Below, piece after piece: positions 34,667 to 58,774 of a stretch of 64,000 nt of DNA. Position 1 is the stretch's first letter. Each line of letters starts with the position of its first letter. The DNA is taken from NCBI RefSeq assembly GCF_032444005.1, contig NC_091283.1:322338001-322402000 (forward strand). The letters are read 5' to 3'. Origin of the DNA: Ranitomeya imitator. Its lineage: Eukaryota. The position numbers were made by a program, and so were the translations under genes. The notes beneath the pieces are model-generated. The model worked only from the letters and a program-made list of their open reading frames with translations. It was not told the DNA's origin and did not search any database.

Positions 34667-35345
34667 ACTTTAAGTCCTAATGGTCTCAATGAGAGTCTTG
34701 GTTTTTCAGCGTTTTTGTAGATAGTATAATATATATATATTTCTTTGAGAGGTATTTTTTAAGGGCAAGGGTGATTTTAATGAGTATTTGTATGTGTTGT
34801 AACTATATGTTAATTATGTGTATTTTTATCTACTTATAGTATATATTTATGGTCCTCCTTCTGCCGCGGTGTCATGAAGAATGTGAGGTTGCCTCTGCGC
34901 CGGTCTTCGTGAATGGATTGCCTCCAAGAATTAAGAACAGATGCTGTTTGTTAATTTTGTCATTAATATCATATAATTAGAATATATTTCTGTATTTGTA
35001 TATATATGGACTAAATTAGGTATAGATATGATATGTGGATATTTTGAGAGAACATTTTATATATGGGGTGTTTTTTACATATATTGTTATATACATGTTT
35101 ATATTTTCATAATAGGGACTTATTACTGCATATTCATATCTATATGGGATTTCATGGAAGTAGACAAGCCTGTTATTTAATTGTGCACTTTCCACTTTAA
35201 AGAAATTTTACATGGGTTGGATTTAAATATATAATACTGTATTAAATTTAATTAATAAATATTTCGCATTTATAGATTATTCATCACTTTTCACTGTATT
35301 ATTTTATTATTAGTATGCACTTTATGCACTGCACTGTTGTGGGTA

Positions 35346-36239
35346 ACATAGTAACATAGTAACATAGTTAGTAAGGCCGAAAAAAGACATTTGTCCATCC
35401 AGTTCAGCCTATATTCCATCATAATAAATCCCCAGATCTACGTCCTTCTACAGAACCTAATAATTGTATGATACAATATTGTTCTGCTCTAGGAAGACAT
35501 CCAGGCCTCTCTTGAACCCCTCGACTGAGTTCGCCATCACCACCTCCTCAGGCAAGCAATTCCAGATTCTCACTGCCCTAACAGTAAAGAATCCTCTTCT
35601 ATGTTGGTGGAAAAACCTTCTCTCCTCCAGACGCAAAGAATGCCCCCTTGTGCCCGTCACCTTCCTTGGTATAAACAGATCCTCAGCGAGATATTTGTAT
35701 TGTCCCCTTATATACTTATACATGGTTATTAGATCGCCCCTCAGTCGTCTTTTTTCTAGACTAAATAATCCTAATTTCGCTAATCTATCTGAGTATTGTA
35801 GTTCTCCCATCCCCTTTATTAATTTTGTTGCCCTCCTTTGTACTCTCTCTAGTTCCATTATATCCTTCCTGAGCACCGGTGCCCAAAACTGGACACAGTA
35901 CTCCATGTGCGGTCTAACTAGGGATTTGTACAGAGGCAGTATAATGCTCTCATCATGTGTATCCAGACCTCTTTTAATGCACCCCATGATCCTGTTTGCC
36001 TTGGCAGCTGCTGCCTGGCACTGGCTGCTCCGGGTAAGTTTATCATTAACTAGGATCCCCAAGTCCTTCTCCCTGTCAGATTTACCCAGTGGTTTCCCAT
36101 TCAGTGTGTAATGGTGATATTGATTCCTTCTTCCCATGTGTATAACCTTACATTTATCATTGTTAAACCTCATCTGCCACCTTTCAGCCCAAGTTTCCAA
36201 CTTATCCAGATCCATCTGTAGCAGAATACTATCTTCTCT
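35346..36239 (-). mobile_element. 5'-truncated CR1, copy 2
   Basis: Nearly identical to the 3' part of copy 1; (CTATGTTA)n tail; TGGGTA duplicated at 35340-35345 and 36239-36244. Confidence 0.95.
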
Positions 36240-40061: not shown

Positions 40062-40436
40062 TGTGGAGACCAGACTGAACCAAAGGATCCATTTTGTCTC
40101 CCAGATGAAATCTGCTTCTGCACAGCAAACTTGACATTTCCTTTTATAGAAGTAATCACGCGCGCATTTCTCCTTGATATTGTAGCCTTTCACCCACATA
40201 CCAGATATTGTAACTTTTCACTAGTATAGATTTGCTTTGTAAGTGATTATGAAATATGAGCGCTTGTGCGCATGTCTGTAAATGCCTAACTTCTTACTAT
40301 ATAAAGAAGGGGCAGCGCCCAGTGAGGCAGGCGTGCTCCGGGGCTACCCCTGTTTATGAACACACAACCTTTGTGCTGCGTGTCATTTACTTGGATTCCT
40401 CAATCCAGGAAGCCAGGGACGGAAGAGGACTCAACA
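40062..40436 (+). repeat. ERV 5' LTR (375 bp)
   Basis: TG...CA ends; TATATAAA box; matches 47206-47580 with one C/T difference seen. Confidence 0.97.
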
Positions 40437-40441
40437 TTTCT

Positions 40442-40460
40442 TGGCACCCGAAACAGGGAC
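40442..40460 (+). promoter_or_regulatory. Primer-binding site, tRNA-Lys(UUU)-like
   Basis: TGGCACCCGAAACAGGGAC vs canonical TGGCGCCCGAACAGGGAC; a splice donor CAG|GTAAGA follows at 40554/40555. Confidence 0.8.
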
Positions 40461-41141
40461 CCGAGGCGAGAGTGTCTACTCGAGATTCACCTACAGATAC
40501 GGACAACGGAGATCTGGGATAATGGACGGCAAATGAATTGAAAAACCTGGCCAGGTAAGAGACATTATTAGTTCTCTTTTATCTGCCCTGTATTATCCGA
40601 AAGATCTCTACGAGCCATGTCACGCTGGGTTAGTCTAGTAGTGAGTAGATACCTATAAAACTCGGGTTACCATATTGTATAGATTTATGAGTCCTGTCCC
40701 TGGCAGTGTGTGAACAAGTGTGAAGGTTGTGGCATGTTATGAAAGAAGGATAAAAGTACGTAGAACAATAAGCCGAAATTGCTAGGACAAGTCTTATTAG
40801 TGAAGTCAGCCTAACTGGGTCATGTGGTTGCGTCCTTTCGGGGAGACCTCCGCCCATGCTTGACTCTCTTTGAGAAACTTGTTCCTTCATTTTTGGATAA
40901 GAGTTTGATAGAATGAGCCCAGGACACGAGTCCATGAGCCTGGGACAAGTATGATAACAGAGACGGAAAGTTTGGTGATCTGTTTGGTGTTGCTGATCCT
41001 GTTTGCGTGCATTGTAGGAATCAAGTTTATTCTGCACATTAGAAAGAACGGAGCAGATCAGCCCTTCAATATCTTAGCTCCCTAAGGAGGTGATTGTCCA
41101 AACGTCACCTAGGATAAGTGTAGCTATTATTGAAAAGAAAA

Positions 41142-42536
41142 ATGGGAAATAAACAGACAAAATCCGTCTTAGGACAAGTAGAAGCAAAAGATATCATACA
41201 GGAAAGATGTGGAAAGACAGTCAGAAGGCAGATCAGAAGGGTAAGAGAAAAATTGGGAATTTCAGAAGCACTTATGTTTAGCACTGAATGGGAAAGACTG
41301 AGTAAAGAACGAGGTGGAATTATCAAAGACAATGGGTGGGAAGAAATCATACACTGTATGATAAAGGTCTCAAAAACAGCTAAAGAGGAGAATTGGAAGT
41401 ATGATCCAGACACTTCCAAATGGAGTATGGGTACGGGAAAATGTTGTGCCACGACTCATTCAGTTCCTCCTCCTTACCTAGATCCGAATGTTCAACCATT
41501 TGTACCTTCTGAAGGAGGACAAACCAAACCAAATTTATATCCTGGGTTAAATGGGGTGGAAGGATGGGTGTGCAAAAATTGTGGCCAGCAGAATCCAGAC
41601 TGGAGAACTGAATGTTCTGCCTGTGGGGCCCCCAGAGGTCATCAATTGTTAGCTCCTGTTAGGATAGTACCGAAACCCTTCAGAGAAACTGGTGTAGATG
41701 GAGCAATGGCAACTAGATATCACCAAACCCGACAATACTTCCCTTGGTCCCCCGCTGAAGGAATGTCTCTTCTACATAATGCACCAGATCCTACCCAGTA
41801 CCCAGTTAGATTCGCACAGTATATACAGCAAATTATGCAGACTCATGCAGGAGTCTGGGCAGATGGAGAGGAATTATGTAGAATGAAAATGACTCCTGGT
41901 CTCTTCCAGGAACTGCTAACACATCTACAGGGACACAGGCCACAGGTGGGACAGGAGCTACAAGAGGGACAAGCGGGACAAGGTGCCTTACAAACGATAG
42001 AATCAGGAACACAATTTGTAGACCATTTAATAGTTTTCATGAGGCAGAAACAGAGGCAGAGAGGAACAACGGGAGTGGTGGCTCAGAGACCTGGACAATC
42101 GGTAGATGAATATTATCTAGGGGTAGAGAATAATTTTAGAGATGAAGGAATAGATCTAACCGCTCCAGGAATGATGAGGTTAATTACAAAAACCTTTATA
42201 GATGGATTGTCTCCAAAAGTAAAGGAAAAACTTAAGGCTGCAACTCCTGATTGGAGAACCTTGGAAGACCCACACTTGGCCAGGCAAAAAGCCGTAGGGA
42301 TAGAGTTGGATTTAAGAGAAAATCATAAGCCTGTCAGAATAGCGCAAGCAAACACAACAGGTGGAAGGGCAAGACATAATTTTCCCTGTCATTACTGCAA
42401 GAAACCAGGACATTTCCAGAAAGAATGTAGAAAGAAGCAGGCAGACATAAAATCAGGAAAATTTGTACCAAAGAATAAGCCCTCAGACATCCAACAGACA
42501 TCCATAGTGGATGGTCCCATACCAGACTCAGATTGA
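41142..42536 (+). CDS. gag: Retroviral Gag (465 aa from MGNKQ)
   Basis: MG myristoylation start, PPPY late domain, RanBP2-type finger, MHR-like QRPGQSVDEYY, single CCHC CHYCKKPGHFQKEC. Confidence 0.9.
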   Translation: MGNKQTKSVLGQVEAKDIIQERCGKTVRRQIRRVREKLGISEALMFSTEWERLSKERGGIIKDNGWEEIIHCMIKVSKTAKEENWKYDPDTSKWSMGTGKCCATTHSVPPPYLDPNVQPFVPSEGGQTKPNLYPGLNGVEGWVCKNCGQQNPDWRTECSACGAPRGHQLLAPVRIVPKPFRETGVDGAMATRYHQTRQYFPWSPAEGMSLLHNAPDPTQYPVRFAQYIQQIMQTHAGVWADGEELCRMKMTPGLFQELLTHLQGHRPQVGQELQEGQAGQGALQTIESGTQFVDHLIVFMRQKQRQRGTTGVVAQRPGQSVDEYYLGVENNFRDEGIDLTAPGMMRLITKTFIDGLSPKVKEKLKAATPDWRTLEDPHLARQKAVGIELDLRENHKPVRIAQANTTGGRARHNFPCHYCKKPGHFQKECRKKQADIKSGKFVPKNKPSDIQQTSIVDGPIPDSD

Positions 42537-45500
42537 CTCAATGTGTTACAAACTTCCCTACCAGCTAGAAGACCTATAATACAGGTGAATGTGGGGGGAA
42601 GAGAGATTCCATTTTTAATAGATACAGGTGCAACTTCCTCAATTTTGAATCAAGATTTTCTTCCAAACCCGGAAGATATTTCACAACAAACAACTTTTGC
42701 TGAGGGTTATGATGGGGTAATTCAAACACTACCATACACTGTGCCCCTAGAGGTCTCCTTAGGACCTAAATGTTTTGCATCCAGATTTTTGTATGCCAGA
42801 GGTGCCCCAACATGTTTGTTGGGAACTGATGTCTTGAAGAAATTAGAAGCTAACATCAATTTTAGGGAAGATGGCACAGTCATGCTGACTATCCCTGATG
42901 ATGCAGAAACATTAGAACAATATGTCAGAATTCAGGCTTTTGAGGATTATACTGAAGAAAAAGAGTACACCACAGATCTAGACCTCTCAACAGTCCCAGA
43001 AACACTGTGGGCACAGGGTGACACTGATGTGGGATTATTGCATATCTCTCCTGTAAAACTATCTGTGCAACCAGGAACTGTTCTCCCACAGCTCAGACAA
43101 TACCCTGTGAGTGCCCAGCAGGAACTAGCGATTACAAAACAGATAGAGGGATATAGAGAGAAAGGAGTTTTGGTAGAGATACAATCACCTGCTAACACTC
43201 CTCTGTATCCAGTCAAGAAGAGAACTCTTGATAAGGGTTCTATGCCCAAATATCGTATGGTACATGATCTAAGAGAAATAAACAAAGTTCTAGATCCAAT
43301 CACCCCAGTTGTACCCAATCCTCATACGTTACTATCACAGATACCAGCCAGTTCTCAAGTGTTTACTGTAATAGATCTTTCAAATGCATTTTTCTCGGTT
43401 CCTTTACACCAAGACAGTTGGCATTTGTTTGCATTTACATTTAAGGGCAAACAGTTGGCGTGGACACGCCTTCCACAGGGAATGATACACTCCCCTACTC
43501 TTTATTCAAATGCCCTACAAACAGTCCTTCAGAGGTTTGAACCCGAACCACAGGTAGTAATTTTGCAGTATGTGGATGACCTACTACTTTGCTGCCCAGA
43601 TCTAGAAACTGCAGAAAGGTCCACTGTGAGTTTACTATGTTTTCTAGAAAAAGAAGGGTGTAAAGTGAATAGACAAAAGCTACAAGTTTGTCAGACCAAA
43701 GTGGTCTTTCTAGGTCATTGCATTTCTCAAGGTAAAAAGCATCTTACACCTCAAAGAATTGAAGCAATAAGACAGATGAATGAGCCTAGAAATCATAAAC
43801 AGCTACGAGCATTTTTAGGAATAGTGTCTCATTGTAGACAATAGATTATACATGCCAGTCAACTAATGCAACCACTGTATGACTGTGTAAAAAGTGAACC
43901 TTATTTGTTGACAAAAGAAGGTCAGATTTCGTTCCAACAATTAAAAGATGCCCTTGTTTCAGCTCCAGCGTTAGGGCTACCAGACTACACCAAACTATTT
44001 CAGCTTATGGCTGCAGAAGTTGATTCCCATGCTACAGGAGTTCTTACCCAGAAGCATGCAGGGAAACAAAGACCAATTGCATATCTTTCAGCAAGGTTAG
44101 ATCCCGTAGCTAGAGCAGCGCCAACCTGTGTACGTGTAGTTGTTGCTGTCTCACTATTGTTGGACAAAGCATCAGAAATTGTCCTAGAGTATCCACTCAC
44201 AGTTCAAACTACACATGATGTTTATGGGATATTAAACCAGGTCCAACCAAAACACATTTCCATGGCCAGACATTTGCGGCTACAGTGTTCTTTGCTGCTA
44301 CCCTCCACTATCACATTTGCAAGGCTTCAGACTCTCAATTTAGCTACACTGCTACCTCTCGAGTCTGAAGGGGGGAATAAGGACACTGATACACACACAA
44401 ATGTTTTCCCTACAGACACACATGATTGTACAGAGCTCATTTTACAAGAAACGGTAGGCTTACCCAATGTATCCGAAACACCACTTCAAAATCCAGATTT
44501 AGAGCTGTTTATAGATGGTAGTAGGTTTGCAGATGACACAGGTAACTTCCATACAGGGTATGCAGTTGTGTCAGGATCTGAAACTCTCAAAGCAGAACCG
44601 CTTCCACCGAAACAATCTGCACAAGAAGCAGAACTAACAGCATTGATTGAAGCTCTAAAAATAGCTGAGAATCAGACAGCTAATATATACACTGATTCTA
44701 GGTATGCACATGGTATTGTGTTTGATTTTGGAGTAATCTGGAGAGCTAGAGGTTACATGACAGCGTCAGGACAACCTGTAAAACATGCTTCTCTGATCAA
44801 ACAGATCTTAGAGGCTGCACAAGAAACAAAAGAAGTAGCAGTAATCAAGGTAGCTGCACATGTGAGACTCGACACTAGGGAATCTAGGGGAAATGATAGG
44901 GCTGATAAAGCAGCCAAAGCAGCAGCAGTCAAACCCTTACAACAGGTCCATACTGTAAACCTCACAGAAAATACTGAAGATAGACTGAGACAAGCACAGG
45001 AAGATGCAGGAGAAGAGGAGAGGGACAGGTGGAAAAAGGAAGGGGCAGAAGAACAAGAGGGAATTTGGAAGAAAAATGGACTAATATGTCTACCTAGAGC
45101 CTGGTACCCGATAGTAGTTGGTGGATTACATCACCCTACGCATGTGTCTGCAAATGCAATGACACTACTGGCAAAGCAAGTCTGGTTGGCTCCAGGTTTT
45201 GGCAACTACGCAAGAGACTATTGTGCTGCATGCGCTATATGCCTGACACATAATCCCGGACAGACAGCAAAGACCCCTATGAAGCACCACGTCCGACCTC
45301 TCTACCCGTTTCAACGGTTGCAGATAGACTTTATCCAGCTGCCAAAGAGTAATGGGTATGAGTATGTGTTGGTGTGTGTGGACATGTTCTCGGGGTGGCC
45401 AGAGGCCTATCCAGTTCGGAAGGCTTCAGCTAAAAACACTGCTGTAAAGCTAGTTACCGAACTGGTGCCCCGTTATGGTCTCCCTGAAGTGATCGAGTCA

Positions 45501-46082
45501 GATAGGGGTACTCATTTCACTGGAGAAATATTTCAAAATGTACTAAAAATGTTGGGTGTTGAAAGTCAGTTACACACTCCGTATCATCCTCAAAGTTCTG
45601 GTAAGGTAGAACGCATGAATGGAACTTTAAAATTAAAAATACAGAAAGCCATGGCTGAAACAGGAAAGCCTTGGACAGAATGCCTTTCACTGGCCCTTTA
45701 CTCAATACGCAATACCCCAAGGGGTAAGACTAAACTGTCTCCATATGAAATTTTGTTTGGCAGGACTGCCAATTTAGGATGTTATTTTCCACAGCAACTT
45801 GTGTTAAATATTAAATCACTGACTTCCTATGTGCAAAATCTTCAGAAACAATTAACTAAGGTGCATGCACAAGTTTTTGCTTCCCTTCCAGATCCTGACA
45901 ACACTGAAGGAAGTCACAAGTTGGAACCAGGTGATCAAGTCTATATAAAAAGACACACCAGAAAGGCTCTTGAACCAAGATTTGACGGACCCTTCCAAGT
46001 CCTGTTGACAACACCTACATCAGTCAAGCTTGAAGGAAAGGCATCATGGATACATGCAAGCCATTGCAAAAAAGCAGTATAA
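42537..46082 (+). pseudogene. pol: Retroviral pro-pol (PR-RT-RNaseH-IN), in frame with gag, one nonsense codon (TAG 43842-43844)
   Basis: FLIDTGA, LPQG, YVDDLL, DGS...SAQEAEL...YTDSRY, HHCC, QIDF...ESDRGTHF...VERMNG, GPF motifs; the frame is continuous across RQ*II. Confidence 0.93.
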
Positions 46083-47081
46083 AACTCATGATATTGATGT
46101 TAATAATGTTAACCACAACGAAGGCATGGGAAAGACTAAATTCTTTAGCCCCTTTGAACAATAGATTCGTACAACATCATAGAAAATTAGTGCACGACTT
46201 GTTAAACAATACACAAACCCTGACAGATTGTTGGATCTGTACCCATTCACCAGTATCAGCCACAAGTATACCTTTTCTAGCAGTTCCCGTGTCAGCTGAA
46301 GAGATATTCAGCTTTGTGGGATCTGCCTGAGGGTACATTTTGGATATGCGGAGAAGGAGCATATAAATGGCTTCCCGTAGGTATAAAGGGTACTTGTACA
46401 TTAGGACGCCTAACCCCAGCTACTTTCATAATTTCAAATAAACAAGTGAATATGCAAGCCGTACCCAAGCACACACTATATAAAAGAGCTGCAGATAACT
46501 CACCACGTCCCTCAGGGAGGCCACATATAGTACAAATGGGAATTCCCAACAAAATTGCTAGTACCATTTTTATTTATCCTATGTTAACACAAATGTGGGA
46601 TAAATTAGTTAGAGCCACGGATTATCTAGATGATCAGATCTGGGATATATTGGATATACTAAACACTAGTGTAGCTGTACAGAATCAGCTTATAATAGTC
46701 GTCAACCAACATACCCTGGTATTGGATTACCTAACTGCCTCACAAGGGGGTATGTGTCAAATCATTGGACCCACCTGCTGTCATTATATAGACCCGAATA
46801 GTACTATGAGTATGACATTTAAATTAAAGGACGTACAACGACTCAGAGATCAGTATGACAAAGACAATGACCAGAATAAGGATAGCTGGTGGTCAGATAC
46901 CTTTTCTTTTCTTAACCCAGCCAACTGGTTCAGAGGGATCGGTGGGTGGGTTGCCGGGATTATGCAGAGCATAATACATATAGTTATGATTATTGTAATC
47001 ATATATGTGTTATTCAAGATTGTACTCAAGGGTATCTCAGTATGCACAAATAAATTTTGTGTAATAGATGCAAGAGTATAA
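46046..47081 (+). pseudogene. env: Gamma-type env with internal SU deletion and frameshift near 46310
   Basis: Signal peptide, CWIC, furin site LYKR, ISD-like NQHTLVLDYLTASQGGMC, CX6CC and TM helix; two overlapping ORFs. Confidence 0.88.
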
Positions 47082-47193
47082 AGTTTATTATTGCCGTACT
47101 AATTTTCTTTTATATTTTAGTATACTGCCGCATAAAGAAGAAAATGCACAAGCTTCATGCAAAAATTTATGACAAATAATAAAAGAATATGTC

Positions 47194-47204
47194 AAAGGGG
47201 GGAA
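47194..47204 (+). promoter_or_regulatory. Polypurine tract
   Basis: AAAGGGGGGAA immediately 5' of the 3' LTR. Confidence 0.9.
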
Positions 47205-47205
47205 T

Positions 47206-47580
47206 TGTGGAGACCAGACTGAACCAAAGGATCCATTTTGTCTCCCAGATGAAATCTGCTTCTGCACAGCAAACTTGACATTTCCTTTTATAGAAGTAAT
47301 CACGCGCGCATTTCTCCTTGATATTGTAGCCTTTCACCCACATACCAGATATTGTAACTTTTCACTAGTATAGATTTGCTTTGTAAGTGATTATGAAATA
47401 TGAGCGCTTGTGCGCATGTCTGTAAATGCCTAACTTCTTACTATATAAAGAAGGGGCAGCGCCCAGTGAGGTAGGCGTGCTCCGGGGCTACCCCTGTTTA
47501 TGAACACACAACCTTTGTGCTGCGTGTCATTTACTTGGATTCCTCAATCCAGGAAGCCAGGGACGGAAGAGGACTCAACA
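47206..47580 (+). repeat. ERV 3' LTR
   Basis: Direct repeat of 40062-40436 (offset 7144). Confidence 0.97.
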
Positions 47581-47682
47581 ATAACATCACTGTGAAGAAC
47601 AAATACTCTTTATCTGTTATCTCTGAACTTTTCGACCGACTGAGAGGAGCACGAATTTTCACCAAACTTGATTTTCGGGGAG

Positions 47683-47983
47683 CATCTATGGGAACTCCAT
47701 CAAGATTATTGGAAGACCATTCCCAGTGACAACCTCTTGAAGCTCATCAAGAGAATGCCAAGAGTGTGCAAAGCAGTCATGAAAGCAAAAGGTGGCTACT
47801 TTGAAGAACCTAGAATATAAGACATAATTTCAGTTGTTTCACACTTTTTTGTTAAGTATATAATTCCGCATGTATTAATTCATAGTTTTGATGCCTTCAG
47901 TATGAATGTACAATTTTCATAGTCATGAAAATACAGAAAAATCTTTAAATGAGAAGGTGTGTCCAATCTTTTGGTCTGTACTG
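47683..47983 (+). mobile_element. Tc1 transposon 3' fragment
   Basis: HLWELHQDYWKTIPSDNLLKLIKRMPRVCKAVMKAKGGYFEE; ends TTTGGTCTGTACTG|TA. Confidence 0.85.
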
Positions 47984-47989
47984 TATGTG

Positions 47990-48285
47990 TAAGTTTTAAG
48001 ATGTGCGGTGGCAAACTATATATTCAAGTAAAAGGACCTAGAGATAGACAATCATGTGATCAAAATGTGTACTATGATTGGTCCGTAGTAAGTATAAGAC
48101 CTATGCACTTACCTAATTATATCAGCTGTGATAAAGATCGTGACAGATCGAAACGCGTTGCTGGACTATTGGCATGCTAAGCGCACCGTCACAGAATGAT
48201 GATTGAGCCGCTCTTGTAATTTTAAATTGTGTCTTCAATAAAGAAAACTCATTTAAGGAGCTGGGACAATACTATCTTTTCTACA
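47990..48285 (+). mobile_element. Penelope pLTR remnant with damaged hammerhead (48123-48163)
   Basis: GATTGG and GTATAAG boxes, then CAGC-[damaged core]-GATC-gtgaca-GATC-GAAAC-GC-GTT-GCTG, then AATAAA. Confidence 0.6.
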
Positions 48286-48530
48286 ATAGTAAAATGCCTG
48301 GAAAGTCCATGTAAAAGAAACCCCTTATGTTATGTATATTATGTCTGTGGGAGTTTAATCTGAAGTGTAGTGGTTGTATAGACCTCCCCACATACTGTTT
48401 TTTACATTTACACTCAATCATATAAATTACAAAATCTGTAGCACAATTTAGATGTTGATTAATAGAAAATACTTCTTTTGTAACAGAGGAAATTATATTA
48501 ATAGTAATAGGTTCCCCTTTGTCAGACCAC
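48286..48530 (-). mobile_element. Penelope GIY-YIG endonuclease fragment
   Basis: LNCATDFVIYMIECKCKKQYVGRSIQPLHFRLNSHRHNI, then SRHF in another frame. Confidence 0.85.
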
Positions 48531-48689
48531 CCCCATGCCCGGCGGTCAGTATGACTTTGCGATTCCCTTGGCCCCATACCTTCTGTCTGGTCTGACTCTC
48601 TGTCACCACGTCTGCTACAGTGTCTCCTCCTAGGCCACTCAGCACTGAGCTAACAGAGGAGTCACAAATTCTAACTCTTCTATTACTGA

Positions 48690-49860
48690 ACTGTTAGTCT
48701 CTCCAGACCTTGAGTTGAAAGTGGCCACCATCTACTTAGCATTTCCTGCAGCTATCTATTGATCTGTACCCTCTCAAGCATTAGCTGCTCTACCTCTCTT
48801 AGGTACGCCATGCAATATTCCAGGAGTAGTTGAATATTTTTAAGGCTCTCCCTTGCTCCGACCACAAAGAATGGAACCATCTCATCTTCACCAGCTACCG
48901 GGAACCTCACACTCACCACACCGGACTTATTCACAATTTCCTGCATCACTTTTCCAAGTCTCCCAAGATTTCTAGACACTTGAACGATGTCTTCCACAAA
49001 CTCCGTCCGACTTTGAGCTTTCCTTGCATGCTCCAGACATCAAGCAGCTTCCTTATTCCTCAACAGGATTATCTGTTTTGTGCGATGACAGTGTAGGTGC
49101 ATGTCACTCAGGTTAGCCACCCGATTCACTGTGACAGTATAACTAACTGGAGTCTGGCGCCCAGTTCGCACTACACGCTTCCAACGCCTTTCTAAATGCC
49201 TCATGCATAGCCTCACTGGCACAAGTTTCTCGCACGTCCTCGGGTACCTCTGCCACACACTGGGAAAGCAAAGTCTCATCTTCTTGGACAAAGTGTTTGA
49301 TCTTCTTGTCCTATGAGTCAGAGCTGTTTTTCAAGACGTTGACATCCCTTGTGAGGCCGTCTGCTTGGCACTTCCCCTGCTGGATTTCTTCCTCCCTGTA
49401 GACTACTTCTTTGGTCAGACTCTCCAGCTTACTCTCCTTCTTTGCCATTAGAACGAGAGAGCACGACAGTTTGTTCCGTAGAGCGAAGAGCTCGTTTTTT
49501 TGGTCATCCATGTGATTGTGGAGCTGGGCATTAGCCTCCTTCTCGATCTTGAGCTCTCGGAGAACTTTATCCCGCTCCCATGCCAGGCAGCGATTCTTGT
49601 CCTCTCTCCAGAGAAGCTCCTGCTGATGCTTCTCATGGGCCTCTCTGATGTATGCGTTCTTCTCCTCCAAGTCTGAGGACAGTTGGAACTGAGTTCCAGA
49701 TGGAACTTATTTTTGACTCCAATGCTGGGATTTTCTCAGATTTCTGTTCTTCCAGATGCTTTAGTTCAGCCTGTAAATCTGCCACTTTTTGCTTCCCATG
49801 AGAAAACTCTTTGGCCAGCTCCTGCACTTTGTTGCAGCAGGTCATTTCCAGCTGAGACAC
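48690..49860 (-). pseudogene. FXR1: Intronless coiled-coil / FXR1-like fusion pseudogene
   Basis: Minus strand: coiled coil, then in the same frame (through one stop) QCVAEVPEDVRETCASEAMHEAFRKALEAC; after a frameshift TVNRVANLSDMHL...LLRNKEAA*CLEH|[20 protein letters not shown]...[16 protein letters not shown]...[40 protein letters not shown]. Collinear with recalled FXR1 sequence. Confidence 0.85.
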
Positions 49861-51040
49861 GTGTTTGATACCGTGCCGCACAAGAGGTTGGTACACAAAA
49901 TGAGAATGCTTGGTCTGGGGGAAAATGTGTGTAAATGGGTTAGTAACTGGCTTAGTGATAGAAAGCAGAGGGTGGTTATAAATGGTATAGTCTCTAACTG
50001 GGTCGCTGTGACCAGTGGGGTACCGCAGGGGTCAGTATTGGGACCTGTTCTCTTCAACATATTCATTAATGATCTGGTAGAAGGTTTACACAGTAAAATA
50101 TCGATATTTGCAGATGATACAAAACTATGTAAAGCAGTTAATACAAGAGAAGATAGTATTCTGCTACAGATGGATCTGGATAAGTTGGAAACTTGGGCTG
50201 AAAGGTGGCAGATGAGGTTTAACAATGATAAATGTAAGGTTATACACATGGGAAGAAGGAATCAATATCACCATTACACACTGAACGGGAAACCACTGGG
50301 TAAATCTGACAGGGAGAAGGACTTGGGGATCCTAGTTAATGATAAACTTACCTGGAGCAGCCAGTGCCAGGCAGCAGCTGCCAAGGCAAACAGGATCATG
50401 GGGTGCATTAAAAGAGGTCTGGATACACATGATGAGAGCATTATACTGCCTCTGTACAAATCCCTAGTTAGACCGCACATGGAGTACTGTGTCCAGTTTT
50501 GGGCACCGGTGCTCAGGAAGGATATAATGGAACTAGAGAGAGTACAAAGGAGGGCAACAAAATTAATAAAGGGGATTGGAGAACTACAATACCCAGATAG
50601 ATTAGCGAAATTAGGATTATTTAGTCTAGAAAAAAGACGACTGAGGGGCGATCTAATAACCATGTATAAGTATATAAGGGGACAATACAAATATCTAGCT
50701 GAGGATCTGTTTATACCAAGGAAGGTGACGGGCACAAGGGGGCATTCTTTGCGCCTGGAGGAGAGAAGGTTTTTCCACCAACATAGAAGAGGATTCTTTA
50801 CTGTTAGGGCAGTGAGAATCTGGAATTGCTTGCCTGAGGAGGTGGTGATGGCGAACTCAGTCGAGGGGTTCAAGAGAGGCCTGGATGTCTTCCTGGAGCA
50901 GAACAATATTGTATCATACAATTATTAGGTTCTGTAGAAGGACGTAGATCTGGGGATTTATTATGATGGAATATAGGCTGAACTGGATGGACAAATGTCT
51001 TTTTTCGGCCTTACTAACTATGTTACTATGTTACTATGTT
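49861..51040 (+). mobile_element. 5'-truncated CR1, copy 3
   Basis: Nearly identical to copy 1 from FDTVPH onward; (CTATGTTA)n tail; no TSD found. Confidence 0.95.
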
Positions 51041-51504
51041 CTGCATCCTCCTGTCGAGCAGAGGGCAGCTTCTCCCTAGTGGAGCGGATAGTATGAAGCA
51101 GCTTTGCTCCTGAGCTTCCTTCTCTCCAAGCCAGGGCCGGACTGGCCATCGGGCAGTTCTGGCAAATGCCAGAAGGGCCAGTGGCAGTCGTGGGCCACTC
51201 GTCAGCGCAGACTCACCCCGCCAGCGGCGCCGCATTCAACTATACTGGCATCTATGACGCCGGTACAGTTGTATGCAATGATGGAGGAGAGAGTGTCTGC
51301 TGACGCTCCGTCTCCCATCATTCCCCGCTCTGCCTGGCGCTGATTCTGCGGGTGTGTGGTGACATCATATCATCGCGCACCTGCTGTATGTCAGGCAGGC
51401 AGACTGTAGCTGCTGAGACCGGAGCCAGGAGCAGCGCTGGGCAGGAGGAGAGGTGAGTGTTTTTTTTTTAAATATATCACTGAGTGATAACTGGATTGTG
51501 GGGC

Positions 51505-52200
51505 TATTGGGGGGCTGCATTACATTCTATGGGGGCTGTGCTGCATTACATTCTATGGGGGCTGTGCTGCATTACATTCTATGGGGGCTGGCTGCATTAC
51601 ATTCTATGGGGGCTGTGGTGCATTACATTCTATGGGGGGCTGCATTACATTCTATGGTGGGGTTGCATTACATTCTATGGGGGCTGTGCTGTATTACATT
51701 CTATGGGGGCTGTGCTGCATTACATTCTATGAGGGCTGTGCTGCATTACATTCTATGGGGGCTGTGCTGTATTACATTCTATGGGGGCTGTGCTGTATTA
51801 CATTCTATGGGGGGCTGTGCTGTATTACATTCTATGGGGGGCTGTGCTGTATTACATTCTATGGGGGCTGTGCTGCATTACATTCTATGGGTGGCTGGCT
51901 GCATTACATTCTATAGGGGCTGTGCTGTATTACATTCTATGGGGGCTGGCTGCATTACATTCTATGGGGGCTGGCTGCATTACATTCTATGGGGGCTGGC
52001 TGCATTACATTCTATGGGGGGCTGGCTGCATTGCATTTTATGGGGGAGGGCTGTATTACATTCTATGGGGTGCTGTATTATATTCTATGGAGGGGCTACA
52101 TTATATTCTATGGGGGGGCTGCATTATGCTCTATGAGGGGCCTACCATATACAGTATTATATATGCAGGGGCTGCATTATACTATATGAGGGAGCTACAT
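51505..52200. repeat. 24-27 bp minisatellite within a non-autonomous repeat
   Basis: Repeats of GGGGGCTGTGCTGCATTACATTCTAT. Confidence 0.9.
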
Positions 52201-52399
52201 TATATTCTCTGCCGGGTTACATGATACTCGAGGCTACAATATATTCTGTGGGGTGGCTGCATTATACGCTGGAGTGGCATCACTATACTATATGTTGGCT
52301 GCATTATACTGTATCGAGGACCATGGGGAATACATTATACTATATGAAGAACTGTGGGGTGCATTATACTATGGGAAGTGAATTGTACTACATGGATGA

Positions 52400-52800
52400 C
52401 AATGGTGGGGCATTATACTATATGGAGCACTATGAGGAATGTATTATGCTATTTGGAGGACTGAGGATTGTATTATACTATTTGGAGGACTGAGGAATGT
52501 ATTATACTATATGGAGGAATTGCAGTGTATTTTAATATAAAGGTCTATGAGGAGTGTATTATACTATATGGAGGACTATGTGGAGTATGTAATACTATAT
52601 TGAGGACTGAGGAGTGTATTTTAATATATTGAGGACTATGAGGAGTGTATAATACTATATGGAGGACTGAGGAGTGTATTATAATATATGGAGGACTGAG
52701 GAGTGTATTATACTATATGGAGGACTGAGGAGTGTATTATACTATATGGAGGACTGAGGTTCACATTATAAGGAGGACTATGGGGTGTATTATACTATAC
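52400..52800. repeat. About 29-bp degenerate minisatellite
   Basis: Repeats of GGAGGACTGAGGAGTGTATTATACTATAT. Confidence 0.85.
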
Positions 52801-53229
52801 AAGCAAAATGCTGCCTATTCATCGAGTGATTGGATTGTTTATGTGGGAACAGAAATCCTTGTTCTCAGCAGCACATCGCCAGTGTAAACTGTAGTTGTGC
52901 TGCTGATAACATGATACTGTATGGGGACAGATTGATCTAATAGTGATTGTTCTGATTCCTTCATTCTTTCTCAGTTGGTGTAAAGAGGCAGGGAAAGAAG
53001 CGAACGACTTCACTATTGTCGATCACACTCGTTTAGTGGCCTGAGATCAGCGCATGTAAATACAGCAGAAATGCTGTCGGCTCGCACATTTTCTTTGTCA
53101 TTTTGTTGATTTGATCCTCTCATTGTTGGGTGGCAGCAGTCGATTCGGACAGCTTCTCCTGCAGGCTCTCTGTTTTTTTCTCAGAGTTCTTCTCCAACTT
53201 CAATTTTAGCTGTTGGATCCCTACCACCA

Positions 53230-55080
53230 CCCTGGGTCAGTTTTCTTTTCTCCACGTCATCGACTACCTCTGTGTTGGGGGTTGTCAGTGGTAAAGTGAC
53301 CTCCTTATAAAATACATTAACCTGGTTTGCCGCTGACCCTGTCTCTTCTCCATCCCTCTTCTCCCAGGGTGTAGCCTTTCCTGCCTTTCAGCGACCGCCA
53401 TGTCCCCAGCGACAAAAAGACCTGCCATTTGTACACCTTACCGCATTCTTTTTCTCTTGTGTCATAGTCTGAATGGGAGTCACCACTACTCACCCTGTAA
53501 CCCTGGAACAACAAGTACCCACTTAAACGTGTGTCGGACCCCTTTCCTAGAGCTATCCTGTTTTTAACGGTCACACTCTTGGTCTCCTCTGCTAAGTCCC
53601 CAAAATGGTCAAACCCACACTTTTCCCCGGTCACCCCTAACTCTGGGACATAGACCTTAGGGGGTTCTACCTCCTCCTCATTATGCATCACATTAACAGG
53701 AACCCCTTTAGCCGCCTGCTGTGGTGGGGCTCCTTTAAAGTCATTCCGGCTTCCCTCTAAGCAATCAGACGCTCCCCTTTCCTCCCAAAAACAATTCAAA
53801 GTCCTGACCAATTACAATAGGGTATGGCAAGCCCAGGACTACAGGGACGTCATGGCTGTTAAGAATCGTGAGTGTCTCAATGATTACCCTGGACACCGAA
53901 TAATCCATAGGGACCCCGTGGATGCAGTAGACATCCATCTTCCTTCCGGGGACCAGATAAATAGGGAGTGTGGTGCTCACCATGGTCAGCGGGCTCCCTG
54001 GGTCCAGAATTCCAGTCACGCACTCTACATTCACTTCCCCAGTACAGCTCTGCGACATCTTGTCAGATGGAAAGTCAGTACATAATCCATGTTCGAACAC
54101 TGATCCCACCAACAGTGCCTCGGTGCATACACCGCTGCCCTTTTTGGACCACCACCCCCTTTTGGTACTCCACCACCCCCTTTTGTCACCACCCCCTTTT
54201 GGGACTCCACCCCCTTTGGGGTTCCACCCTTTTTGGGTTACCACCCCTTTTGGGACTCCACCACCATGGGGGCAACCACCATTCTTTGGGGTGTACGCCG
54301 CGGAATCTCCATGGCCCTCTCAGGCCTCCCACACCTATGCACGGCAGTCTACCTGCCCCAAGAGTTCCACACAGTGCGGCTCCGCTCTTCTCTGCAAGGC
54401 TTTGCACCGCTCCACAAGGCTCTGCATGGCTCCGCAAAGCGAGGCTCTGCACTGCTCTGTAAAGCTCTGCACCTCTCTGCACTGCTCTGCAAGGCTCTGC
54501 ATGGTTCCACAAGGCTCCGCACCTCTCTGCACAGCTCTGCCCGGTTCTGTTTTGCAAATTTCATGGACCCCCCAATCCACAGCAAGCCGCCCGAGGTTCA
54601 TGGACCCACCGATCCACAACAAGCAGCCTCGAGTTCGTGGACCCACCGATCCACAGCAAGCACCTGCTGAAATCCTCCCAGGTACCTCCTGGACCGATGT
54701 CCGCAGTTTAGCAGCAATTGTAGGGATCGTAGCTACTCAGATGTAGCAGGATGAAGACAGGAGATACGTTTCTTTAAAAGAAAATCCGTGCGGGATCATT
54801 CGCTCCATGAACCCCTAAGCACAACAAAAGGTAAACGGCCTTCAGAGCATGCAAAACAACACAAAATGTCCTTAGCCGGGCTCTCTGATCCCTCAGGCCT
54901 GTGGTCACACAGGCTGGTGTAATGTCCAGCAGGCAGGCTCGGTCTGGAGCCACACACACAGGAGGCCTTCCATCTCCCAAGACACAGACCATGTGCAAAC
55001 AACAGCCTTCATTATGTAAGCTGTAACCATACCCATAGGTGAGATATGTGGGTAGCTAGACCCGCCTATCTCTCACAGCT
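53230..55080 (-). mobile_element. Decayed Gypsy (Gmr1-like) remnant: LTR-like segment, gag relic, protease
   Basis: VTGILDPGSPLTMV...VYCIHG...LPYPIVIGQDF protease-like peptide; LTR-like end TGCTACA near 54742; internal short tandem repeats at 54170-54550. Confidence 0.6.
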
Positions 55081-55087
55081 ACCCGAG

Positions 55088-56402
55088 CGGAGATTTTCAG
55101 CCCAAATTTTTGGGCTGAAAGTGCCCCTCTCGGCTTATACTCGAGTCATGGTTGGTGGCAGGGTCGGCGGGTGAGGGGGAGAGAGGACTGTCGCATACTC
55201 ACCTGCTCCTGGCGCAGTCCCTGCCTGTCCCATGGTCTTTGGGTGCCGCAGATCTTCCTCTGTTCAGCAGTCATGTGGTACCGCTCATTAAAGTAATGAA
55301 TATGGACTCCACTCCCATAGGGGTGGAGCAGCATATTCATTCCTGTAATGAGCGGTACCAGTGACCGCTGACAGAGGAAGAAGATGCAGTGCCCGGAGAC
55401 CATCTGTCCAGGAGAAGGAGCCAGGGACCGCGCCGGAGCAGGTGAGTATTTCATATTTACTTGTCCGCGTTCCACCCGCCGGGTGCCGCTCCGTCTTCCC
55501 GTCCTCTTGCTGTGACTGTTCAGGTCAGAGGGCACGATGACATATTAGTGTGCGCGCCGCCCTCTGCCTGAACAGTCAGTGCGGAGAGACGGGACGCTGA
55601 GGAGCAGCGATGAGAGGGGATTTTTTTTTATTGCAGCAGCATTATATGTGGCACAGCTTTATATGGAGCATCTATGGGGCAATAATGAACGGTATGGAGC
55701 ATTATATGTGGCACAGCTTTATATGGAGCATCTATGGGGCAATAATGAACGGTATGGAGCATTATATGTGGCACAGCTTTATATGGAGCATCTATGGGGC
55801 AATAATGAACGGTATGGAGCATTATATGTGGCACAGTTTTATATGGTGCATCTATGGGGCATGTATGGGGCCATAAAGAACTGTATGGAGCATTATATGG
55901 GGCATCTATGGGGCCATAATGAACTGTATGGGGCATTATATGGGGCATCTATGGGGCCATAAAGAACTGCACGGAGCATTATATGGGGCATCTATGGGGC
56001 CATAAAGAACTGCATGGAGCATTATATGGGGCATCTATGGGGCCATAAAGAAGTGCATGGGGCATTATATGGGGCATATTTGTATATGGAGCATCTTATG
56101 GGGCCATAAAGAACTGAATGGAGCATTATATGGGGCATATTTTAATATGGAGCCATAATGAACTGTATGGAGCATTATATGGGGCTCCTGATTCAATATG
56201 GATATTCAAAAACACTTAACCTACTGATGTCTCACTTAATTTTACTCTTATTGTTATGTATTTCTATTTTTGGCATTTACCGGTAGCTGCTGCATTTTTG
56301 CACCCTAAGCTTATACTCGAGTTAATAAGTTTTCCCAGTTTTTTGTTGCAAAATTAAGGGGTCGGCTTATACTCGGGTCGGCTTATACTCGAGTATATAC
56401 GG
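55088..56402. mobile_element. Second pogo/Tigger-like MITE, left TIR lost, with about 60-bp and 40-bp minisatellites
   Basis: Shares GAGATTTTCAGCCCAAA...GGCTTATACTCGAGTC and the right TIR with 30501-32029. Confidence 0.85.
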
Positions 56403-56699
56403 TATCTGAACCACTAATAACAATTATATTCAATGCATACCTATTTAAAAAAAAAATTTATAAAAGGTTTCTCCAGAATTGTTGGTCCGACCCCCCCAGT
56501 TTTTGGTGAACCTAGAGGGCAACCGAGTTTTTGAGCCAGGGATCAAGGCGCTAGCACTGGGAGAAATGGGTATCTTGCCGCCATCCCATTTCAGATTCTT
56601 AATAATCTCCATCCGCCTTTCCTAAAAGTATTAACATGGGGAGGTATCAAATCAGAACATGAATCCCACCCCTTCACTATACACTGCTGGCTAATATAT

Positions 56700-57300
56700 T
56701 CAGGGGAGGTAAAACATCTTTTAGTTAACCAGTTTATTAACATTTCAACAAGTCGATGTATGAATAAACCACCCGGTGTGTCCTCTCCACCCCATATGCA
56801 GCTGAGAAGGTGGCTCCCAGAAATAGATCACGTATCCATTTTTCCACAAAGTCATAATTTTGTTGTAAGCACATTTCCATTTTATGTTCTGTCACTCGGA
56901 TACGTTCTGGCCAGAGCACCATTTGGTCCTCCAGACTCGAGATTCTGTACTCCACCTATCTTTCCCAGATTTGACATGTCATTGCGGAGGAGTCCCAAAT
57001 CAGTTTTAACCTCTTAAACCTCTTCAATTTTCCCAGTCAGGGAAGCTGTGCTGCTTTGAATGTCAGTTAGCAGTTGTGTGGATACCTGTTTCAGAGTGGG
57101 TTCTGAATCCATATCCTTTGGTTCTTGTGACATTGATGTCTCTCCTTGAGACAATTTGTTTAAGGGTTTCTGAATTGTCATCAAATTCTTTCCCCTGGCG
57201 TAGCTCCTCAGCTTGTCAGCTGCAGATTGTGATTTATTAGGACTCAATGCTTTCCCCAAATTAAGTATGCAATATGAGAGTAAGTCTTATGACTGGTTAT
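56700..57300 (-). mobile_element. L1-type LINE ORF1 relic
   Basis: MGK...LTGKIEEV, RISSLED, FVEKWIRDL...VERTHR; frameshifted. Confidence 0.7.
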
Positions 57301-57525
57301 TCAGTATGAATTGATAGGATAGCGTTAGAGGTTCGGATATTAATAGTAAGAGGGTTACAAAGTCATGTCCCTACTCAATTTTGCTGCATAATTATGTGCA
57401 ACGGGCACAATTCTCAAAAAGAGCACTAGATGGCATCAGCGCCCTGGAGCCTGCAAGTGCATAGAGTTTAATCACTCCAAACAATGAGGGGAGGGGGGAA
57501 GAGGGGAAGTTGTTTCCCTTCCTTA

Positions 57526-58189
57526 AGGTACCTTCACACTGAGCAACTTTAGAACGATAATGATAGCGATCCGTGACGTTGCAGCGTCCTGGATAGCGAT
57601 ATCGTTGTGTTTGACACGCAGCAGCGAACAGGATCCTGCTGTGACATCGCTGGTCGGAGCTAGAAGGCCAGAACTTTATTTCGTCGCTGGATCACCCGCT
57701 GACATCGCTGAATCAGCATGTGTGACACCGATCCAGCGATGTGTTCACTTGTAACCAGGGTAAACATCGGGTTACTAAGCGCAGGTCCGCGCTTAGTAAC
57801 CTGATATTTACCCTGGTTACCATTGTAAATGTAAAAAAAAAAAAAAACACTACATACTTACATTCCAGTGTCTATCGCGTCCCCCGGCGTCAGCTTCCCT
57901 GCACTGTGTCAGCGCCGGCCGTTAAACAGGCTGTGCTCTGCTTTACGGCCGGCCGGCGCTGACACAGTGCAGGGAAGCTGATGCCGGGGGATGCGACAGA
58001 CACCGGCGCGGCCCTGTGCTTAGTAACCCGATGTTTACCCTGGTTACCCGGGGACTTCAGCATCGTTGGTCGCTGGAGAGCTGTCTGTGTGACAGCTCTC
58101 CAGCGACCACACAACGACTAAACAGTGACGCTGCAGCGATCGGCATCGTTGTCTATATCGCTGCAGTGTCACTTAATGTGACAGTACCT
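57526..58189. mobile_element. Second palindromic AGGTACC MITE, inverted relative to 21376-22098
   Basis: TTA|AGGTACCTTCACAC...GTGACAGTACCT|TAA; shares the GGTAACCAGGGTAAACATCGGG hairpins. Confidence 0.8.
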
Positions 58190-58774
58190 TAAGTCTGTAA
58201 ACCCCCATACCTCTGCTGCAGCTAGCCAGCTATCTTCTCCAGCTGTTTCAGGATCTCCTGCCTGCCTCATGGTGTCTCTCCCCCATCTCCAATGTCTTCT
58301 CCACGTACCAGGGAAATCCCAAGATGGCCGCTGCACCTCAGGTCTGTTCCCGCCATCAGCGGTCCCGTGTCTCCAGGGGACTCAGGCCTCAGCACCCAGC
58401 CCACAGGCGCTCTCCTCAGCCCTCTCGATGTCTGCATAGCAGATGCCTGTCGACTCCAAGTGCATTCAGCGCGCCGCTGCCTCAGCTCTGCACGTGTGCA
58501 GATTTCCGTGACAAGTGCTGACTCAAATCCTTCCTTTCAGCTCCCTGGTGTCTCCTCCAGCCGGACTGAGACAACAACCTGCCGTTTACTAGGCAGGAAC
58601 TCGACGTTTGTGAAAATGATGGGGAGAGCTCAGTGCTGGACGTCTGCTCTCTTCAGTGTCTTAGCCACGCCCCATCTGAGTTATTTTTGATGGTCAACAA
58701 AATATGATTTTCTAGTAATTTATTTTTCATACTCTACTGTAGGTTTCTCTCTGTGTGAGATTTTTGATGTTTAA

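What the first reader, a model, noticed from the sequence alone, without database searches (positions are those of the whole stretch)
48690..49860. Chimeric coiled-coil + Fragile-X-family (FXR1-like) gene, intronless and decayed
At least 180 codons of heptad-rich coiled coil run in frame into sequence collinear with FXR1/FMR1 from the KH0 region through KH2 and the NES helix. The Agenet/Tudor domains are replaced by the coiled coil. No introns occur across a region that is multi-exon in FXR1, so it is a retrocopy-derived fusion. Differences from recalled FXR1 are mostly conservative (D>N, K>R, V>I, I>V), suggesting a period of coding constraint as a distinct gene before this copy acquired stops and a CR1 hit. 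This points to a possibly undescribed lineage-specific, perhaps multicopy or TE-borne, FXR-derived family. Best candidate for a novel system in the window.
Basis: partly seen in the sequence, partly recalled or inferred. Interest (0 to 1): 0.8.

Follow-up and report, generated by a model that had tools for sequence, protein, structure and literature searches.

The report
Dead copy of frog FXR1-capturing element
This is a broken copy of a many-copy, poison-frog-specific gene that joins a retrovirus-type protease remnant and a coiled coil to an RNA-binding piece copied from the host gene FXR1; this copy is dead, but its intact relatives look like an undescribed case of a mobile element keeping a captured host gene.

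Summary
On the minus strand a decayed open reading frame runs from about 54,700 to 48,546. It is collinear with whole RefSeq proteins of Ranitomeya imitator, R. variabilis and Dendrobates tinctorius. Those proteins share one architecture:
- a leader with short repeats
- a retropepsin-like domain
- a Ser/acidic linker
- a coiled coil
- FXR1-type KH0
- KH2, with KH1 absent
- a C-terminal helix and tail

The window copy is dead. It has four in-frame stops, at least five frameshifts, three small deletions (one removes the KH2 GxxG loop) and about 3.4 kb of inserted transposons, including a very young CR1.

In a tree the family, including this copy, forms one clade (100/100) inside FXR1, probably anuran FXR1, on a long stem. 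DNA runs of two frog species hold dozens of diverged copies. D. tinctorius has at least 11 near-identical intact ORFs on different scaffolds.

The best reading is a non-autonomous retroelement that captured a spliced FXR1 mRNA. I could not show LTRs at this copy or fetch DNA of intact copies. The scan found this family before on other DNA of this genome (s1-292462). No paper found describes it.

The parts
54335..54700 (-). Start of the decayed ORF: the leader, whose first about 37 nt are triplicated in tandem, followed by short peptide repeats of the QKGAV type read in shifted frames.
   Evidence: The leader resembles the N-terminus of P0370 (GALLW...VD..VHE). Direct repeats D5 lie at 54,380-54,558. 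P0004 residues 2-200 align to 54,316-53,789.
53768..54244 (-). Retropepsin-like domain. It is still an open 159-codon ORF, with the motifs ILDPGSP ... IVIGQD.
   Evidence: tblastn to P0150 residues 8-82: 40% identity, E 1e-13. ESM Atlas: first hit scores 0.96 with 180 shared features, and every family listed is of the retroviral aspartyl protease type (RVP, RVP_2, Asp_protease_2, gag-asp_proteas). The same result came from relative P0150. There was no Pfam hit, and the AlphaFold2 model was of low confidence.
53295..53736 (-). Ser/acidic linker (GDSHSD...KEC motif), read in two frames.
   Evidence: Collinear tblastn pieces to P0150 residues 88-306 in frames -2 and -3.
51041..53100 (.). Inserted, highly repeated element with 26- and 29-nt minisatellites. 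It interrupts the ORF. The right boundary is approximate.
   Evidence: Repeat families D1-D3. Summed word depth is 1e4-1e5 or more, against 1e2-1e3 for the gene. It falls between P0150 residue 306 (53,295) and residue about 320 (49,862).
49863..51040 (+). 5'-truncated CR1-type LINE (C-terminal half of the RT plus 3' end) inserted into the ORF.
   Evidence: Pfam RVT_1, E 2e-21. It is 99.6% and 99.2% identical to 27,848-29,024 and 35,345-36,239. Word depth is about 1e6.
49314..49862 (-). Coiled-coil region in two pieces, with a frameshift near 49,700. It ends at the stop at 49,311-13.
   Evidence: P0150 residues 337-393 align at 47%, E 7e-9. P0004 residues 353-527 align to 49,682-49,122. The homologous stretch of P0150 is predicted as one 95-residue helix with pLDDT above 90.
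49043..49310 (-). FXR1-type KH0 domain in two pieces: a stop at 49,143-45, a frameshift, and about 8 residues deleted.
   Evidence: Pfam KH_9 (PF17904), E 5e-6 and 9e-4. Alignment.
48755..49039 (-). KH1-less junction, KH2 (GxxG loop shortened by 5 residues) and the C-terminal helix (LMLERVQIN). Stops lie at 49,040-42 and 48,752-54.
   Evidence: PDB 2qnd FMR1, E 2e-14. Representative search: best hits are family proteins at 60-67% identity. Weak Pfam FXMRP1_C_core match.
48546..48751 (-). Decayed tail in several frames, ending at the family's natural stop (...RRYGAKGIAKSY*, stop codon at 48,546-48).
   Evidence: Matches the C-terminus of P0370 and its relatives (...DKRYGGKGVATPY). Tail pieces of P0007 and P0002 align to 48,693-48,536.
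48284..48520 (-). GIY-YIG endonuclease fragment (Penelope-like). It is adjacent to the copy but not part of it.
   Evidence: Pfam GIY-YIG, E 6e-4. None of the family tails matches it.

Best explanation
Window 54,700-48,546 (minus strand) is a dead, transposon-riddled copy of a dendrobatid-specific, intronless, multicopy chimeric gene. Intact members encode leader/repeats, a retropepsin-like domain, a linker, a coiled coil, FXR1-derived KH0 and KH2 (KH1 missing), a C-terminal helix and a basic tail.

Most likely origin (inferred): a spliced FXR1 mRNA, taken from the start of KH0 onward, was captured behind the protease of an LTR-type retroelement in place of pol. This gave a non-autonomous element that then amplified and diversified in poison frogs.

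The window copy does nothing now.

Most likely function of intact copies (inferred): the protein oligomerises through its coiled coil and binds RNA through KH2. This layout resembles LINE-1 ORF1p or a Gag nucleocapsid. It would serve the element's own RNA or hijack host FXR-type RNP granules.

Shown: membership of the family, FXR1 ancestry of the module, multicopy status, decay of this copy, and uneven conservation that favours KH0-KH2.

Inferred: carriage by an LTR-type element, the capture mechanism, and the function.
For: Collinearity with whole family proteins.

Shared derived features:
- the KH1-less junction
- homologous coiled coil
- the same natural stop motif
- 5 of 8 family-specific fixed residues present, and none in the FXR1 state

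Tree: the family plus the window copy is one clade (100/100). FXR1 plus the family scores 95/94. The family nests in neobatrachian FXR1 at 96/97. The stem is 0.71-0.75 substitutions per site, against about 0.01 for host FXR1 branches.

Fold: the model of an intact core matches FMRP KH0 (rmsd 1.2-1.5 A) and KH1-KH2 (E 1e-12).

Mobile-element signs:
- retropepsin-like N-terminal domain
- single-exon genes
- 11 ORFs at 90% identity or more on 11 or more scaffolds of D. tinctorius
- 40-60 distinct contig variants per site in DNA runs of two organisms
- no pol-type gene called within 10 kb of three intact copies

Constraint: mean pairwise identity is 71% in KH0 and 67% in KH2 with no indels. The linker and tail are 34% identical with about half their columns gapped.

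Decay of this copy.
Against: - No LTR pair, primer-binding site, polypurine tract or target-site duplication could be shown around this copy. The stretch upstream of the ORF start that I first considered as an LTR is a MITE-like DNA transposon.
- No gag-like ORF was found upstream.
- The retropepsin call has no Pfam or profile support, and the AlphaFold2 model was poor.
- DNA of intact copies could not be fetched, so there is no dN/dS and no view of element ends.
- The AU test does not reject the family lying outside all FXR1 rows (p 0.117).
- RNA evidence is one contig in a run whose RNA label is a guess.
Confidence: 0.72

Rival explanations
1. A host gene family, not a mobile element. One ancient chimeric retrogene (domesticated protease remnant, coiled coil and FXR1 module) was expanded by segmental or L1-mediated duplication. 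The window copy is a pseudogenised paralogue.
For: RefSeq models them as ordinary protein-coding genes. No LTRs were seen here. The core domains are conserved. No gag or pol neighbours are called.
Against: At least 11 near-identical intronless copies lie on different scaffolds in one species. There are dozens of diverged copies per genome. Clusters are species-specific, as in transposon turnover. There is a retropepsin remnant at the N-terminus. No poly(A) tail follows the stop in this copy. An earlier scan note reports LTRs on a young copy; I did not check that.
Confidence: 0.2
2. An ordinary processed pseudogene of FXR1 that landed by chance next to unrelated coiled-coil-coding DNA.
For: It is intronless and decayed.
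Against: The coiled coil, the KH1-less junction and the N-terminal domain are shared with intact proteins of three other species. The copy groups with them at 100/100 and is only 54% identical to host FXR1.
Confidence: 0.02
3. The family is carried by some other class of mobile element, for example a Penelope-like element, given the GIY-YIG fragment 25 nt downstream of the stop.
For: A GIY-YIG fragment lies in the same orientation directly after the ORF.
Against: No family protein tail matches the GIY-YIG stretch. Penelope-like elements have no retropepsin (established knowledge). The window holds many unrelated transposon fragments.
Confidence: 0.05

Closest known systems
Vertebrate FXR1 (FMR1/FXR1/FXR2 family of RNA-binding proteins)
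   Same: KH0, KH2, the helix that follows (the nuclear export signal region of FMRP) and the start of the C-terminal core are homologous. The module groups with FXR1 rather than FMR1 or FXR2.
   Different: No Agenet/Tudor domains and no KH1. Only 50-54% identical to host FXR1, while frog and mouse FXR1 are 90% identical over the same columns. Intronless, multicopy, and fused to a coiled coil and a retropepsin-like domain.
RefSeq models of dendrobatid frogs, for example XP_069584836.1 and XP_069605559.1 ('restin homolog') in R. imitator, XP_077155914.1 in R. variabilis, and XP_073403172.1 and XP_073425164.1 in D. tinctorius
   Same: Same architecture and the same derived features. The window copy is collinear with them from the leader to the stop.
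   Different: Those are intact ORFs. The window copy is 59-66% identical to the members compared over the KH0-KH2 module, apart from the divergent P0152/P0015 lineage (48-49%). It forms its own old lineage and is broken by stops, frameshifts and insertions.
Host-mRNA capture by endogenous retroviruses, as with KIT-ligand and nectin3 in crocodilian ERVs (PMC4299795)
   Same: An intronless host coding sequence sits inside a retroelement, replaces element genes, is amplified as a lineage and keeps open reading frames.
   Different: The cargo here is a truncated intracellular RNA-binding module fused in frame behind a protease remnant and a coiled coil. The family is more diverged and more numerous.
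LINE-1 ORF1p (coiled coil plus RNA-binding domain). This is an analogy from my own knowledge, not homology.
   Same: An N-terminal coiled coil followed by RNA-binding domains, in a protein encoded by a retroelement.
   Different: No sequence relationship. Here the RNA-binding part is host-derived KH domains. No function has been tested.

Membership tests
FMR1/FXR protein family | Two N-terminal Agenet/Tudor domains | tested here: not met
   No Agenet Pfam hit in the window pieces or in any family protein. The coiled coil and linker precede KH0.
FMR1/FXR protein family | KH0 domain | tested here: met
   PF17904, E 5e-6 and 9e-4 in the window; 1e-15 to 1e-25 in relatives. The model matches 4qvz at rmsd 1.2 A.
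FMR1/FXR protein family | KH1 domain | tested here: not met
   A 60-residue gap between ...HLECTK and KARSFLEF... in every family row and in the window.
FMR1/FXR protein family | KH2 with intact GxxG loop | tested here: not met
   The window copy lacks 5 residues of the loop. Most intact relatives keep a G-x-x-G (GRFG or GRLG).
Dendrobatid retropepsin / coiled-coil / KH0-KH2 family | Collinear architecture with the KH1-less junction, grouping inside the family clade | tested here: met
   Clade support is 100/100 in two trees.
Dendrobatid retropepsin / coiled-coil / KH0-KH2 family | Intact open reading frame | tested here: not met
   Four stops, at least five frameshifts, three deletions and about 3.4 kb of insertions.
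Non-autonomous LTR retroelement carrying a captured gene | Pair of long terminal repeats flanking the ORF | tested here: not met
   No direct repeat links 54,700-58,500 with 47,580-48,700. This copy's 3' side is overrun by other transposons, so absence at this copy says little about the family.
Non-autonomous LTR retroelement carrying a captured gene | Retroelement-derived protein domain (retropepsin) | tested here: inconclusive
   The Atlas gives RVP-type families at 0.95-0.96 for two queries that are only 37% identical, plus the D(S/P)G and IIGxD motifs. There is no Pfam, hhalign or Foldseek significance.
Non-autonomous LTR retroelement carrying a captured gene | Dispersed, near-identical copies | tested here: met
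   11 proteins at 90% identity or more on 11 or more scaffolds. 40-60 contig variants per site in two species.
Non-autonomous LTR retroelement carrying a captured gene | Primer-binding site, polypurine tract, target-site duplication | not testable with these tools
   DNA of intact copies could not be fetched. Nothing convincing was seen by eye at this copy.
L1-type processed pseudogene of FXR1 | Direct descent from the host mRNA, with a poly(A) tail | tested here: not met
   54% identity to host FXR1; groups with the family. No poly(A) after the stop.

The most novel reading that the evidence does not exclude
Intact family members are a retroelement-encoded, selected mimic of host FXR1. The protein would be a coiled-coil oligomer with KH0 and KH2 that packages the element's RNA as an ORF1p- or Gag-like substitute, or that enters and subverts host FXR/FMRP granules in the germline. 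If so, a mobile element would have kept and diversified a stolen RNA-binding module for millions of years across poison frogs.
Probability: 0.3. Interest if true: 0.8.

Novelty: new variant of a known kind. Interest (0 to 1): 0.58.

Why it matters
Capture of host genes by retroelements is well known for acute retroviruses and for plants. Few cases are known in animal germlines where the cargo is amplified and kept open across species. Here the cargo is the RNA-binding core of FXR1, a slow-evolving regulator of translation and RNP granules. It evolves 50-100 times faster than its parent, yet its KH0 and KH2 domains are preferentially conserved. That offers a natural experiment on what a minimal FXR module can do. 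It may also be a case of a mobile element using a host RNA-binding domain for its own RNA. The locus in this window is only a fossil. Its value is that it shows the family is old, full-length at insertion, and present beyond the young copies.

Tried and rejected
- The word-indexed search with the 131-residue coiled-coil piece found nothing. Its length filter excludes full-length relatives.
- DNA of intact relatives: five look-ups all returned 'file too large'. So there is no dN/dS and no LTR, TSD or PBS check.
- LTR search within the window: only the unrelated provirus at 40,062-47,580 has LTRs.
- The repeat at 55,086-56,405, upstream of the ORF start, was considered as a possible LTR. It is a MITE-like DNA transposon with perfect terminal inverted repeats.
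- Gag search upstream: no Pfam hit.
- Origin of the coiled coil: only generic coiled-coil neighbours.
- Retropepsin by AlphaFold2 plus Foldseek: model pLDDT 50.6. The top hits are XMRV protease, but E is 0.4, so not significant. hhalign against the window's own ERV and gypsy proteases was not significant. Pfam at E up to 10 found nothing.
- GIY-YIG fragment as part of the family: rejected.
- Literature: no paper links FXR1 with retroelement capture or with dendrobatids.
- AU test of nesting inside FXR1: not decisive, p 0.117.

Full report
**What is at the coordinates.** The signal is on the minus strand. Translating 50,000-48,400 in three frames gives stop-free pieces that join into one decayed reading frame:
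- coiled-coil-type sequence at 49,862-49,699 and 49,706-49,314
- a piece at 49,310-49,146 and a piece at 49,150-49,043, both matching Pfam KH_9, the FMRP KH0 domain (E 5e-6 and 9e-4)
- a 95-residue piece at 49,039-48,755 that matches the crystal structure of FMR1 KH1-KH2 (2qnd) over KH2 and the helix after it (E 2e-14)

The frame is broken by stops at 49,311-13, 49,143-45, 49,040-42 and 48,752-54, and by frameshifts near 49,700 and 49,140. KH1 is absent. Five residues of the KH2 GxxG loop are missing. A + strand CR1-type reverse transcriptase fragment (RVT_1, E 2e-21) starts at 49,863. The window holds no second copy of the gene.

**It belongs to a family.** An exhaustive HMMER search with the KH2 piece found proteins of 367-895 residues at 60-67% identity. 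In these the match lies far from where KH2 sits in FXR proteins. They are RefSeq models from Ranitomeya imitator, R. variabilis and Dendrobates tinctorius, named 'restin homolog', 'fxr1-like' or 'uncharacterized'. Further searches added more members, all dendrobatid. Immediately after them come ordinary FXR1 proteins, then FMR1 and FXR2.

The genes I could look up are single exons, or nearly so. The shared layout is:
- a leader with short QKGAV-type repeats
- a domain with D(S/P)G and IIGxD motifs
- a Ser/acidic linker
- a coiled coil
- KH0
- a junction where KH1 should be
- KH2
- a long helix
- a basic tail

**The window copy is nearly full length.** P0150 residues 8-306 map to 54,013-53,295. 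Residues 337-712 map to 49,824-48,625. The leader is recognisable at about 54,700-54,560. The family's natural stop motif lies at 48,584-48,546.

About 3.4 kb stands in place of roughly 14 codons between 53,295 and 49,862:
- The CR1 fragment at 49,863-51,040 is 99.2-99.6% identical to two other copies in the window, so it is very recent.
- A highly repeated element carrying minisatellites lies at 51,041 to about 53,100.

Downstream of the stop there is a Penelope-like GIY-YIG fragment that no family tail matches, followed by a Tc1 end. About 390 nt upstream of the leader lies a MITE-like DNA transposon with perfect terminal inverted repeats.

**Ancestry of the RNA-binding module.** I aligned the KH0-to-helix columns of 9-12 family proteins, the window copy (pieces joined with X at each break) and 29 FXR1, FMR1 and FXR2 proteins. 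In two maximum-likelihood trees:
- the family plus the window copy is one clade (100/100)
- FXR1 plus the family scores 92/95 in one tree and 95/94 in the other
- the family sits inside neobatrachian FXR1 (96/93 and 96/97)
- the stem is 0.71-0.75 substitutions per site, while host FXR1 branches are about 0.01

An AU test does not reject the family lying outside all FXR1 rows (p 0.117). So 'FXR1-derived' is solid, and 'derived from an anuran FXR1' is probable.

The window copy is 54% identical to dendrobatid FXR1. It is 59-66% identical to the family members compared, apart from the divergent P0152/P0015 lineage (48-49%). It carries 5 of the 8 residues fixed in the family and none of the FXR1 states. 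It forms its own lineage in a basal polytomy of largely species-specific clusters.

**Domains.** AlphaFold2 on the coiled-coil-to-helix core of P0150, with a 32-row alignment, gave mean pLDDT 78.5. The model shows:
- one 95-residue helix with pLDDT above 90
- a disordered acidic linker
- confident KH0 and KH2 folds

Foldseek matched FMRP KH1-KH2 (E 1e-12) and the FMRP N-terminal domain over KH0 (rmsd 1.2-1.5 A, 48-50% identity).

The N-terminal domain is probably a retropepsin. The ESM Atlas returned retroviral aspartyl protease clusters for P0150 residues 1-110 (score 0.95, TM 0.65-0.73) and independently for the window's own open 111 codons (score 0.96, 180 shared features). Pfam, hhalign and an AlphaFold2/Foldseek attempt gave nothing significant. 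I therefore treat this call as likely, not shown. The D-S/T-G triad is altered in many members, including this copy (DPG or DSE). The coiled coil has no identifiable source.

**Copy number, dispersal, expression.** In D. tinctorius one cluster at 90% identity holds 11 proteins of 460-999 residues, encoded on 11 or more different scaffolds. I laid Logan contigs of four runs on 48,650-54,649. Both gene parts have summed word depths of 1e2-1e3 in DNA runs of two organisms. There are 40-60 distinct contigs per variant site, and the listed pieces are about 85% identical to the window. The inserted repeats reach 1e5-1e6. Runs under eight organism labels hold at least 5% of the sampled words.

One run labelled 'RNA?' has a 4,750-nt contig covering the coiled coil at about 80-85% identity. 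That is weak evidence that a relative is transcribed.

**Constraint.** Among five subfamily representatives, mean pairwise identity is 71% in KH0 and 67% in KH2 with no indels. The coiled coil is 56% identical. The first linker and the tail are 34% identical, with about half their columns gapped. Several lineages that differ by 35-50% in protein sequence still have open frames of 700-1,000 codons. Under neutral decay such frames would be closed many times over (inference), as this window's copy shows. dN/dS could not be computed because no DNA of intact copies was obtainable.

**Interpretation.** The chance-fusion and plain-pseudogene readings are excluded. The family is a lineage-specific chimeric gene whose FXR1 part came from a spliced transcript.

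Several signs point to a non-autonomous retroelement in which the coiled-coil-FXR1 segment stands where pol would be:
- dispersed near-identical intronless copies
- species-specific clusters
- a protease remnant upstream of the cargo
- no pol-type gene called within 10 kb of the three loci whose neighbours were listed

I could not check its LTRs. This copy shows none, although its flanks are overrun by other transposons. A host gene family expanded by duplication remains possible, at about 0.2.

The closest published parallel I found is capture of KIT-ligand and nectin3 mRNAs by crocodilian ERVs, with open frames under purifying selection (PMC4299795). No paper held in the library mentions this frog family.

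**Mechanism (inferred).** The intact protein has an oligomerising helix followed by RNA-binding KH domains and a basic tail. This layout is reminiscent of LINE-1 ORF1p (my own knowledge). It could bind the element's RNA for packaging by a helper element. It could also join host FXR-type granules through KH0 and the C-terminal helix. The window copy itself is non-functional.

Noticed in passing
window 40062-47580 (+): Full-length ERV-type provirus with 375-nt LTRs that are 100% identical and with long open gag, pro-pol and env frames. It sits inside a Ty3/gypsy-like pol fragment (39,391-40,047 and 47,517-47,729). I only observed it.
   Followed up: partly
window 27848-29024, 35345-36239 (reverse), 49863-51040: Three CR1-type LINE 3' fragments that are 99.2-99.6% identical to each other, which implies very recent CR1 activity.
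   Followed up: partly
window 30520-32032 and 55086-56405: MITE-like DNA transposon with perfect terminal inverted repeats of about 27 nt (TACCGTATATACTCGAGTATAAGCCGA...) and an internal 43/60-nt minisatellite that differs between the two copies.
   Followed up: partly
window 51041-~53100: Very abundant repeat (summed word depth 1e4-1e5 or more) carrying 26- and 29-nt minisatellites, inserted in the FXR-family ORF next to the CR1. Its class was not determined.
   Followed up: no
window 48284-48520 (-): GIY-YIG endonuclease fragment of Penelope-like type starting 25 nt after the family ORF's stop. It is not matched by any family protein tail.
   Followed up: yes
window 47668-47985 (+) and 56445-57259 (-): By eye, the 3' end of a Tc1/mariner transposase with its terminal repeat, and ORFs that look like LINE-1 ORF1. 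Pfam gave no hit for either.
   Followed up: no
relatives P0013 (R. imitator, older assembly): An annotated protein joins the last 74 residues of a family KH2/helix to a long-chain fatty-acid CoA ligase. This is either exonisation of a family copy or an annotation artefact.
   Followed up: no
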